The notes beneath the pieces were generated by a model. That model had not been told where the DNA came from. It ran no database searches and was given only the letters and a program-made list of their open reading frames with translations. A stretch of DNA of 64,000 nt from positions 62,001 to 126,000 of IMG/VR virus record IMGVR_UViG_3300005941_000003; one strand, given 5' to 3'. How positions within the stretch are numbered: position 1 is the first letter of the stretch; the number at the start of each line of letters is the position of its first letter. Shown piece after piece: positions 57,907 to 58,084 of the stretch. Position numbers and translations under genes: made by a program.

Positions 57907-58030
57907 AATAAAAAAGTCCCGACATTTCTGCCGGGACTGTAGTATGCTCTCTAATGAGATATTATGTTATTACATCAAAGAAGTCTCGTTGAGATGAGAG
58001 GTTGAGAGGAGACACTCGACTTCTTTAATA
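57907..58030 (-). ncRNA. Candidate ~120-nt small RNA with a CU-rich loop
   Basis: Bounded by TTGACA-17-TATATT (58036-58064) and a terminator (57907-57938); no ORF; 9-bp stem around a pyrimidine loop. Confidence 0.55.
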
Positions 58031-58084
58031 TATTCAATATATCAAAACTAGTAAGCATTGTCAACCACTATTTTTATATTTCTA

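What the first reader, a model, noticed from the sequence alone, without database searches (positions are those of the whole stretch)
57907..58064. Stand-alone small RNA with a CU-rich, anti-Shine-Dalgarno-like loop
Seen on the minus strand: promoter TTGACA-17-TATATT (58064-58036); then AAAGAAGTC...GACTTCTTT (9-bp stem) enclosing GAGTGTCTCCTCTCAACCTCTCATCTCAACGA, with CTCCT and TCTCAAC twice; then the terminator GTCCCG..CGGGAC-TTTTTT. There is no ORF, and the ligase has its own separate promoter overlapping the terminator. Known: RNAIII/RsaE-type sRNAs use exposed C/U-rich loops to pair with RBSs. Inference: a phage trans-acting sRNA targeting AGGAG/GAGAG ribosome-binding sites of host or phage mRNAs.
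Basis: partly seen in the sequence, partly recalled or inferred. Interest (0 to 1): 0.7.

Follow-up and report, generated by a model that had tools for sequence, protein, structure and literature searches.

The report
Conserved small RNA of marine jumbo phages
The flagged stretch is a real small RNA gene of about 119 nt, not in Rfam, that is kept in many uncultivated marine jumbo phages and shows an almost invariant C/U-rich loop on a co-varying stem, but what the loop binds is still unknown.

Summary
These are a near-consensus sigma-70 promoter, a 13-bp stem with a 32-nt C/U-rich loop, a small second hairpin, a strong intrinsic terminator and a separate ligase promoter.

The element is far from chance. 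It belongs to an RNA family with 55 distinct versions in IMG/VR marine phage contigs, one copy per genome. Across 39 distinct sequences all 12 modelled stem pairs show compensatory changes. The loop core UGUCUCCUCU(C/A)AACCUCUCUCA is at least 90% conserved at 21 of 22 positions and is predicted unpaired. Rfam has no such family, and neither bacterial genomes nor the searched literature hold it.

Phage translation-initiation regions pair with the loop no better than with shuffled loops, and no target is conserved between two genomes. The only lead is the gp46 initiation region.

In 45 of 53 relatives the downstream genes (a SutA-like RNA-polymerase-binding peptide or a small membrane protein) have no promoter of their own. 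The RNA may therefore also act as an operon leader. No transcript data were available.

The parts
58036..58064 (-). Sigma-70-type promoter P1: TTGACA, 17-nt spacer, TGnTATATT (extended -10). The predicted start is about 58029-58031.
   Evidence: (11/12 match, TG present). A promoter of at least 10/12 sits at the same distance in 48 of 55 family members. Such promoters are about 5-fold enriched in the genome. No start site has been measured.
57973..58030 (-). Stem-loop 1: a 13-bp stem (58030-58018 with 57985-57973) carrying a 32-nt loop.
   Evidence: Fold. Co-variation: 91-92% of cells are paired and 11/12 then 12/12 pairs show changes on both sides, against 34-53% paired in slid controls. Many G:U pairs, and a score of 76.9 bits against 22.5 bits on the opposite strand, place the structure on the minus strand.
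57995..58014 (-). Conserved C/U-rich loop core TGTCTCCTCTCAACCTCTCA. The family consensus is UGUCUCCUCU(C/A)AACCUCUCUCA.
   Evidence: At least 90% identity at 21 of 22 positions in 39 distinct sequences while stem positions vary. Mean unpaired probability is 0.86 against 0.42 for the whole RNA. The exact 21-mer occurs in 79 viral contig stretches.
57960..57972 (-). A/U-rich single-stranded linker UAAUAACAUAAUA.
   Evidence: Its function is inferred only; it could be an Hfq-type site.
57948..57959 (-). Small hairpin 2, UCUC-AUUA-GAGA, followed by GCAUAC. The purine motif AGAG(AG)CA recurs in most relatives.
   Evidence: Folds of 53 family members. The motif is kept whether it lies in a stem or in a loop. 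Its role is unknown.
57910..57938 (-). Intrinsic terminator: a 10-bp stem (6 G-C pairs), a 4-nt loop and U6. The RNA ends near 57910-57912, giving a length of about 119 nt.
   Evidence: 53 of 55 family members have a hairpin plus U-tract at the same place, with different stem sequences.
57880..57908 (-). Second promoter P2, TTGACT-17-TATAAT, abutting the U-tract. It drives the ligase gene.
   Evidence: It is present in only 8 of 53 relatives.
56702..57847 (-). ATP-dependent DNA ligase. It lies after the RNA only in this phage and in L094.
   Evidence: PF01068 and PF14743; context comparison.
56480..56659 (-). 59-aa SutA-RBD-like peptide. In most short-form relatives it is the gene directly after the RNA's terminator.
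   Evidence: PF20661, 29.5 bits against a cut-off of 29.3. Orthologues score 18.9-33.1 bits. Synteny.
59885..59906 (-). Candidate target: the gp46 initiation region GCAAGAGAGAGGUAAAAAC-UUG. A UUG start at 59887 is likely.
   Evidence: It is conserved to the nucleotide, including synonymous sites of the overlapping ORF end, in the clade that carries the RNA. It is replaced by AUG without this Shine-Dalgarno sequence in the clade that lacks it. It offers 7 nt (this phage) to 9 nt (relatives) complementary to ACCUCUC(UC). It ranks 8th of 227 orthologue pairs. This is a weak lead, confounded by phylogeny.

Best explanation
This is an early phage gene for a small RNA of about 119 nt. Host sigma-70 RNA polymerase starts near 58030 and stops at the intrinsic terminator near 57910.

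The RNA folds into a 13-bp 5' stem that displays a single-stranded C/U-rich loop with two CUCUC(A)AC-type half-sites. An A/U-rich linker, a small hairpin and the terminator hairpin with its U-tail follow.

The most likely working part is the loop. It would pair with purine-rich, Shine-Dalgarno-type sequences (GGAG, GAGG, GAGAG) in host and/or phage mRNAs and block ribosome loading, as CU-rich sRNAs of bacteria do.

Shown: the gene architecture, the structure, the conservation and the exposure of the loop. Inferred: transcription, action in trans and the targets.

The terminator probably leaks, so the same promoter also feeds the downstream genes. In this phage they additionally have P2.
For: - Architecture.
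- Family of 55 distinct versions with promoter and terminator in the same places.
- Stem co-variation, with 12/12 pairs compensated in 39 distinct sequences.
- Loop invariant and unpaired.
- One copy per genome in four genomes.
- The RNA is kept although its neighbours change (Hc1-like gene lost, ligase inserted, SegE-type homing endonucleases nearby).
- The loop contains CUCC and CCUC, the complement of the phage's commonest Shine-Dalgarno words AGGAGA and GGAGA.
- The best, sub-threshold, Rfam hit shares the exact 8-mer UGUCUCCU with RF02278. That family has CU-rich unpaired regions complementary to ribosome-binding sites, and overexpressing one member slows growth (PMC5688073).
Against: - No measured transcript: no RNA run holds the stretch. 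The only metatranscriptome contig touching it comes from a relative and spans the gp46 end into the loop.
- The loop pairs with phage initiation regions no better than shuffled loops do (mean -10.7 against -10.5 kcal/mol; p about 0.1-0.2 for 6-8-mers).
- No target is conserved between the two genomes.
- A 22-nt invariant stretch is longer than a normal seed, which hints at a different or additional partner.
- No 18-nt complement exists in 185,579 bacterial genomes beyond 7 scattered hits.
- The host is unknown, so host targets could not be examined.
Confidence: 0.45

Rival explanations
1. Cis-acting leader or attenuator. The element is the 5' leader of an early operon (SutA-like RNA-polymerase-binding peptide, small membrane protein and others). 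The conserved loop binds a factor that sets how much transcription passes the terminator. The short RNA is mainly a by-product of termination.
For: In 45 of 53 relatives the next gene starts 11-84 nt after the U-tract on the same strand with no room for a promoter. Only 8 have a second promoter. The downstream gene is SutA-like in 28, the membrane protein in 23 and ligase in 2.
Against: I did not find an alternative antiterminator pairing with the terminator arm. The terminators are strong and separated from stem-loop 1 by a variable hairpin. In this phage and in L094 the RNA keeps its sequence although the downstream gene has been replaced by ligase with its own promoter. The BoxA consensus GYUCUUUAANA (10.1101/091223) is not matched better than in shuffles.
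Confidence: 0.25
2. Protein decoy or ligand. The invariant loop, with two tandem CUCUC(A)AC half-sites, is a binding site for a conserved pyrimidine-binding host or phage protein (for example Rho, ribosomal protein S1, a cold-shock or KH-domain protein). The abundant RNA would titrate or recruit it.
For: 21 of 22 loop positions are conserved, more than base-pairing seeds usually need. The half-sites are tandem. No extended RNA target exists in the phage or in bacterial genomes.
Against: No candidate protein was tested or identified. The one concrete motif tested, BoxA for NusB/NusE, is not met. The loop is only about 22-32 nt, which is short for a Rho hexamer.
Confidence: 0.15
3. Autoregulatory partner of gp46. 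The RNA, encoded just after gp46 and also forming the 3' end of its message, pairs with the gp46 initiation region (GAGAGAGGU plus a UUG start) to tune synthesis of the gp46/gp47 nuclease.
For: The GCAAGAGAGAGGUA-N5-UUG region is conserved at synonymous sites in every clade that carries the RNA, and is replaced by AUG with no such Shine-Dalgarno sequence in the clade without it. It has 7-9 nt of complementarity to the second half-site. It ranks 8th of 227 orthologue pairs.
Against: Presence and absence follow phylogeny, so the association counts as a single event. L040 changed the initiation region without changing the loop. The L051 clade changed the loop to ACCCUCUC without a matching change. 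A strong Shine-Dalgarno sequence needed to compensate for a UUG start explains the conservation on its own.
Confidence: 0.1
4. DNA-level element (an operator, origin or packaging signal forming a cruciform) rather than an RNA.
For: It lies among replication and recombination genes, and it contains a polypyrimidine tract.
Against: Frequent G:U pairs would be A:C mismatches on the other strand. The model scores 76.9 bits against 22.5 bits on the opposite strand. The promoter and terminator sit at fixed distances in nearly all members.
Confidence: 0.03

Closest known systems
Rfam RF02278, Betaproteobacteria toxic small RNA ('double-hairpin' sRNAs of Burkholderia)
   Same: Both have the exact 8-mer UGUCUCCU in an unpaired C/U-rich region, followed by a terminator hairpin. 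RF02278 members are predicted to cover ribosome-binding sites, and overexpressing one slows growth (PMC5688073).
   Different: The score is 23 bits against a gathering score of 50. This RNA is 119 nt with three hairpins rather than about 60 nt with two. The motif sits in a hairpin loop, not at the 5' end. It is encoded by a phage, and bacterial genomes hold no homologue. The resemblance looks convergent, not homologous.
CU-rich anti-Shine-Dalgarno sRNAs (LhrC of Listeria, RsaE/RoxS, NmsR of Neisseria, phage-borne SprX of S. aureus)
   Same: Short independent transcripts that carry one to three exposed C/U-rich motifs and end in an intrinsic terminator. They act by occluding ribosome-binding sites (PMC4132741 and PMC4005690 listed; NmsR in PMC5688073).
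   Different: No sequence or Rfam relationship. Here the motif is a 22-nt invariant block in one large loop, and no target has been shown.
3'-UTR-embedded sRNAs with their own promoter (DapZ/MicL type; from my own knowledge)
   Same: The promoter lies just after or inside the upstream gene's end, and the sRNA shares its terminator with the upstream mRNA. No terminator lies between the gp46 stop (58085) and P1.
   Different: In most relatives the terminator is also followed by promoter-less genes, so the RNA is a leader as well.
Processive antitermination RNAs (lambda nut/BoxA, HK022 put)
   Same: The same order of parts: promoter, structured RNA, terminator, downstream genes.
   Different: The BoxA consensus is not matched. 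The conserved part is an open loop rather than the stems, and I found no Rfam or sequence similarity.

Membership tests
Rfam RF02278 (Betaproteobacteria toxic sRNA) | Covariance-model score at or above the curated gathering score (50 bits) | tested here: not met
   23 bits, E = 0.086
Rfam RF02278 (Betaproteobacteria toxic sRNA) | About 60 nt, two hairpins, with the CU-rich motif at the single-stranded 5' end | tested here: not met
   About 119 nt and three hairpins, with the motif inside the loop of hairpin 1
Any Rfam 15 family | A match above the gathering score | tested here: not met
   None for the window element or for a long-form relative
CU-rich anti-Shine-Dalgarno trans-acting sRNA (functional class) | Own promoter and intrinsic terminator, with no conserved ORF | tested here: met
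   This is sequence evidence only; no transcript was measured.
CU-rich anti-Shine-Dalgarno trans-acting sRNA (functional class) | C/U-rich motif conserved and unpaired | tested here: met
   21 of 22 positions at 90% or more; unpaired probability 0.86
CU-rich anti-Shine-Dalgarno trans-acting sRNA (functional class) | Specific complementarity to ribosome-binding sites of defined targets | tested here: inconclusive
   The loop contains CUCC and CCUC. Pairing with 272-440 phage initiation regions is not better than for shuffled loops, and no target is conserved. The host is unknown.
CU-rich anti-Shine-Dalgarno trans-acting sRNA (functional class) | Loop-dependent repression of translation in trans | not testable with these tools
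   Needs reporters or toeprinting
BoxA / Nus-factor antitermination site | Match to the gammaproteobacterial BoxA consensus GYUCUUUAANA (10.1101/091223) | tested here: not met
   The best match has 2-4 mismatches in all 55 members, as in shuffles
Transcription attenuator or riboswitch leader | Promoter, leader, terminator and ORF, with no promoter after the terminator | tested here: met
   45 of 53 relatives. Not met in this window, which has P2.
Transcription attenuator or riboswitch leader | A conserved alternative (antiterminator) pairing that competes with the terminator | tested here: inconclusive
   None is evident in the 53 folds. I did not search for one systematically.
Hfq-dependent sRNA | 3' hairpin with a U-tail of at least 5 U, preceded by an A/U-rich single strand | tested here: met
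   Actual Hfq binding cannot be tested here.

The most novel reading that the evidence does not exclude
The invariant 22-nt loop is not an mRNA seed. It is instead the docking site for a conserved host machine component (a termination factor, a ribosomal protein or RNA polymerase itself). Together with the adjacent SutA-like RNA-polymerase-binding peptide it would form an early host-takeover module, either titrating that factor in trans or making transcription from this promoter terminator-resistant. That would be a kind of phage regulatory RNA with no described counterpart.
Probability: 0.2. Interest if true: 0.8.

Novelty: new member of a known kind. Interest (0 to 1): 0.6.

Why it matters
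Very few small RNAs of lytic phages are known, and hardly any from jumbo phages or from uncultivated marine viruses. This is a family supported by co-variation, with an unusually long invariant single-stranded element. It is present once per genome in a whole clade of roughly 340-kb phages and survives heavy gene shuffling around it. It gives a compact, clonable object for testing how large phages use RNA in early infection: about 120 nt under a consensus E. coli-type promoter. The co-variation evidence would support proposing it as a new RNA family.

Tried and rejected
- **DNA search against cultured phages:** the intergenic DNA gave no match.
- **Ligase-based relatives:** 29 loci share no synteny, so they were useless for the RNA.
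- **MAFFT-only alignment:** it gave no consensus structure because the stems were out of register. A covariance model solved this.
- **Cultured relatives:** PA5oct and Vibrio phage 2.275.O lack the RNA.
- **Rfam:** nothing above threshold.
- **Bacterial genomes:** an 18-mer scan gave only 7 scattered hits, fewer than the roughly 35 I estimate by chance. So there is no bacterial homologue and no perfect antisense target.
- **Target prediction:** duplex energies, k-mer tests against shuffles, ungapped and gapped whole-genome scans, and orthologue-pair ranking found no enrichment and no conserved target apart from gp46. A 12-nt perfect complement in this genome lies inside a coding region and is not conserved.
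- **Hc1-like gene as partner:** rejected, because this phage lacks that gene but keeps the RNA.
- **BoxA:** rejected.
- **Small ORF in the RNA:** rejected, because the AUG is not conserved.
- **RNA-seq:** no run holds the stretch, and contigs from four metatranscriptomes were uninformative.
- **Literature search for the motif string:** found nothing relevant.
- **Complex prediction:** not run, because no candidate partner could be paired with a positive control.

Full report

- Promoter: TTGACA-17-TATATT with an upstream TG (58064-58036).
- Terminator: 57938-57910.
- Second promoter: TTGACT-17-TATAAT (57908-57880), abutting the U-tract.

The 124-nt RNA folds at -36 kcal/mol with z = -4.66. No tRNA and no Rfam family is present.

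**Where the window comes from.** It is part of a 246-kb IMG/VR viral contig. A 342-kb version of the same phage also exists. The runs that hold it are marine metagenomes. The nearest cultured relatives are Pseudomonas jumbo phages of the PA5oct group, at only 52% gp46 identity. Consensus sigma-70 promoters are about five times more frequent than in shuffled sequence and follow gene orientation. P1 is therefore credible as an early promoter used by the host polymerase.

**Conservation.**
- Loci found through the ligase share no synteny and were uninformative.
- Loci found through gp46 were decisive. In relatives with 68-79% gp46 identity, the same kind of element lies downstream of gp46.
- A scan for the loop 21-mer found 79 viral contig stretches.
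- I collected 55 distinct versions. Of these, 48 have a promoter of at least 10/12 that places the start 15-25 nt before the loop motif, and 53 have a hairpin plus U-tract.
- There is a short form of about 105-125 nt with three hairpins.
- There is also a long form of 150-220 nt. It carries an extra conserved hairpin (GGGUGGGUUAGACCUUAACGUACCAC) and an A-rich tract.

**Structure.** A covariance model of stem-loop 1 recovered the element in all these clades.
- On 39 distinct sequences, 91% of cells are paired and all 12 pairs show changes on both sides. No shuffle reaches these values, and slid controls give 34-46% paired (the smaller set is). The alignment was fitted to the model, so the numbers lean towards the structure, but the margin is large.
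- G:U pairs are frequent, and the opposite strand scores 22.5 bits against 76.9 bits. The structure therefore belongs to the minus-strand RNA.
- The loop core UGUCUCCUCU(C/A)AACCUCUCUCA is at least 90% conserved at 21 of 22 positions while the stem consensus is degenerate. Its mean unpaired probability is 0.86, against 0.42 for the whole RNA.
- The RNA occurs once per genome in four genomes. It is absent from PA5oct and from a Vibrio jumbo phage.

**Context.** In most relatives the gene order is gp46, then an Hc1 histone-like 58-aa gene (PF07432), then the RNA, then a SutA-RBD-like peptide of 57-62 aa (PF20661), then a small membrane protein.
- In long-form phages the membrane protein follows the RNA directly.
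- This phage lacks the Hc1-like gene altogether. It has the ligase, with its own promoter, between the RNA and the SutA-like gene at 56480-56659.
- SegE-type GIY-YIG and PDDEXK endonuclease genes nearby fit a region of frequent insertion.
- The RNA survives this shuffling, which argues for a function of its own.
- On the other hand, 45 of 53 relatives have no promoter between the terminator and the next gene, 11-84 nt away. There the RNA promoter must also feed the operon by read-through.
- No terminator lies between gp46 and P1, so the element is also the 3' end of the gp46 message.

**Function.** The loop holds CUCC and CCUC, complementary to the phage's commonest Shine-Dalgarno words (AGGAGA, GGAGA).
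- The best, sub-threshold, Rfam hit is RF02278. It shares UGUCUCCU and belongs to CU-rich sRNAs predicted to cover ribosome-binding sites. LhrC, NmsR and SprX are further analogues.
- I could not show targeting. Duplex energies with 272 initiation regions equal those of shuffled loops. Complementary 6-8-mers are only slightly and non-significantly enriched in two genomes.
- Ungapped and gapped genome scans and orthologue ranking between this phage (342 kb) and a complete relative (342.6 kb) gave no conserved target.
- No 18-nt complement exists in one genome each of 185,579 bacterial species beyond scattered hits that I take as chance.
- The one lead is gp46 itself. Its GCAAGAGAGAGGUA-N5-UUG initiation region is fixed, even at synonymous sites of the overlapping ORF, in all RNA-bearing clades. 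It is replaced by AUG without this sequence in the RNA-less clade. This follows phylogeny, and loop and initiation-region variants do not co-vary.
- BoxA was tested as a concrete alternative and is not matched.

**Transcription evidence.** No RNA run holds the stretch. In one metatranscriptome a 271-nt contig of a relative runs from the gp46 end into the loop. A 254-nt contig shows that this phage is present there. Neither defines transcript ends.

**Verdict.** I put this at about 0.9.
- Mechanism: trans-acting pairing through the C/U-rich loop is the best single reading, at about 0.45.
- Main rivals: a cis leader or attenuator role (about 0.25), a protein-decoy role (about 0.15) and gp46 autoregulation (about 0.1). 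Several of these may hold at once.
- Novelty: a new member of the known kind 'phage-encoded or CU-rich small regulatory RNA'. The 22-nt invariant loop is the feature that may yet place it elsewhere.

Noticed in passing
window 56480-56659 (-); orthologues at L037:5183-5356, L044:2283-2471 and L062:5659-5847: A 57-62-aa peptide matches the SutA RNA-polymerase-binding domain (PF20661, 18.9-33.1 bits; cut-off 29.3). It is the gene right after the RNA in most short-form relatives. It may be an early modulator of host RNA polymerase.
   Followed up: partly
L037:4804-4980, L044:1932-2108, G003:183645-183818: A 58-aa Hc1 histone-H1-like protein (PF07432, 41 bits) lies directly upstream of the RNA in most relatives. 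It is absent from this phage's 342-kb genome.
   Followed up: partly
window 59885-59906 (-): gp46 probably starts at a UUG (59887) preceded by GCAAGAGAGAGGUA, which is also the last four codons (ARER) and stop of the upstream 198-aa ORF. This sequence is invariant at synonymous sites across the clade.
   Followed up: partly
window about 28700-44800: Many families of diverged direct repeats (70-240 nt; spacings of 162-168 nt and multiples) lie within long reading frames. This suggests giant repetitive, probably structural or fibre, proteins.
   Followed up: no
L070:2242-2406, L078:4350-4540, L134, L170 and other long-form relatives: Long-form versions of the RNA carry an extra conserved hairpin, GGGUGGGUUAGACCUUAACGUACCAC, followed by AAAAAGCACAAAAAGG. 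Rfam has no match for it.
   Followed up: partly
L037:6158-6598 (-), L052:5748-6293 (-), L037:5353-5922 (+): SegE-type GIY-YIG endonuclease (PF19835), a phage PDDEXK endonuclease (PF24608) and an ART-PolyVal ADP-ribosyltransferase domain protein (PF18760) lie close to the RNA in relatives. The region after gp46 looks like an insertion hotspot.
   Followed up: partly
own genome G000:C1 about 217316 (-): A 12-nt perfect complement of the loop (GAGGAGACACUC) lies inside a 294-aa coding region. It is not conserved in the complete relative and is probably chance.
   Followed up: yes
whole genome (G001 and G003): Near-consensus sigma-70 promoters (11/12 or better) number 63 and 91, against about 13 and 23 in shuffles. 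They are strongly biased to the coding strand, so this jumbo phage clade seems to rely widely on the host's primary sigma factor.
   Followed up: partly
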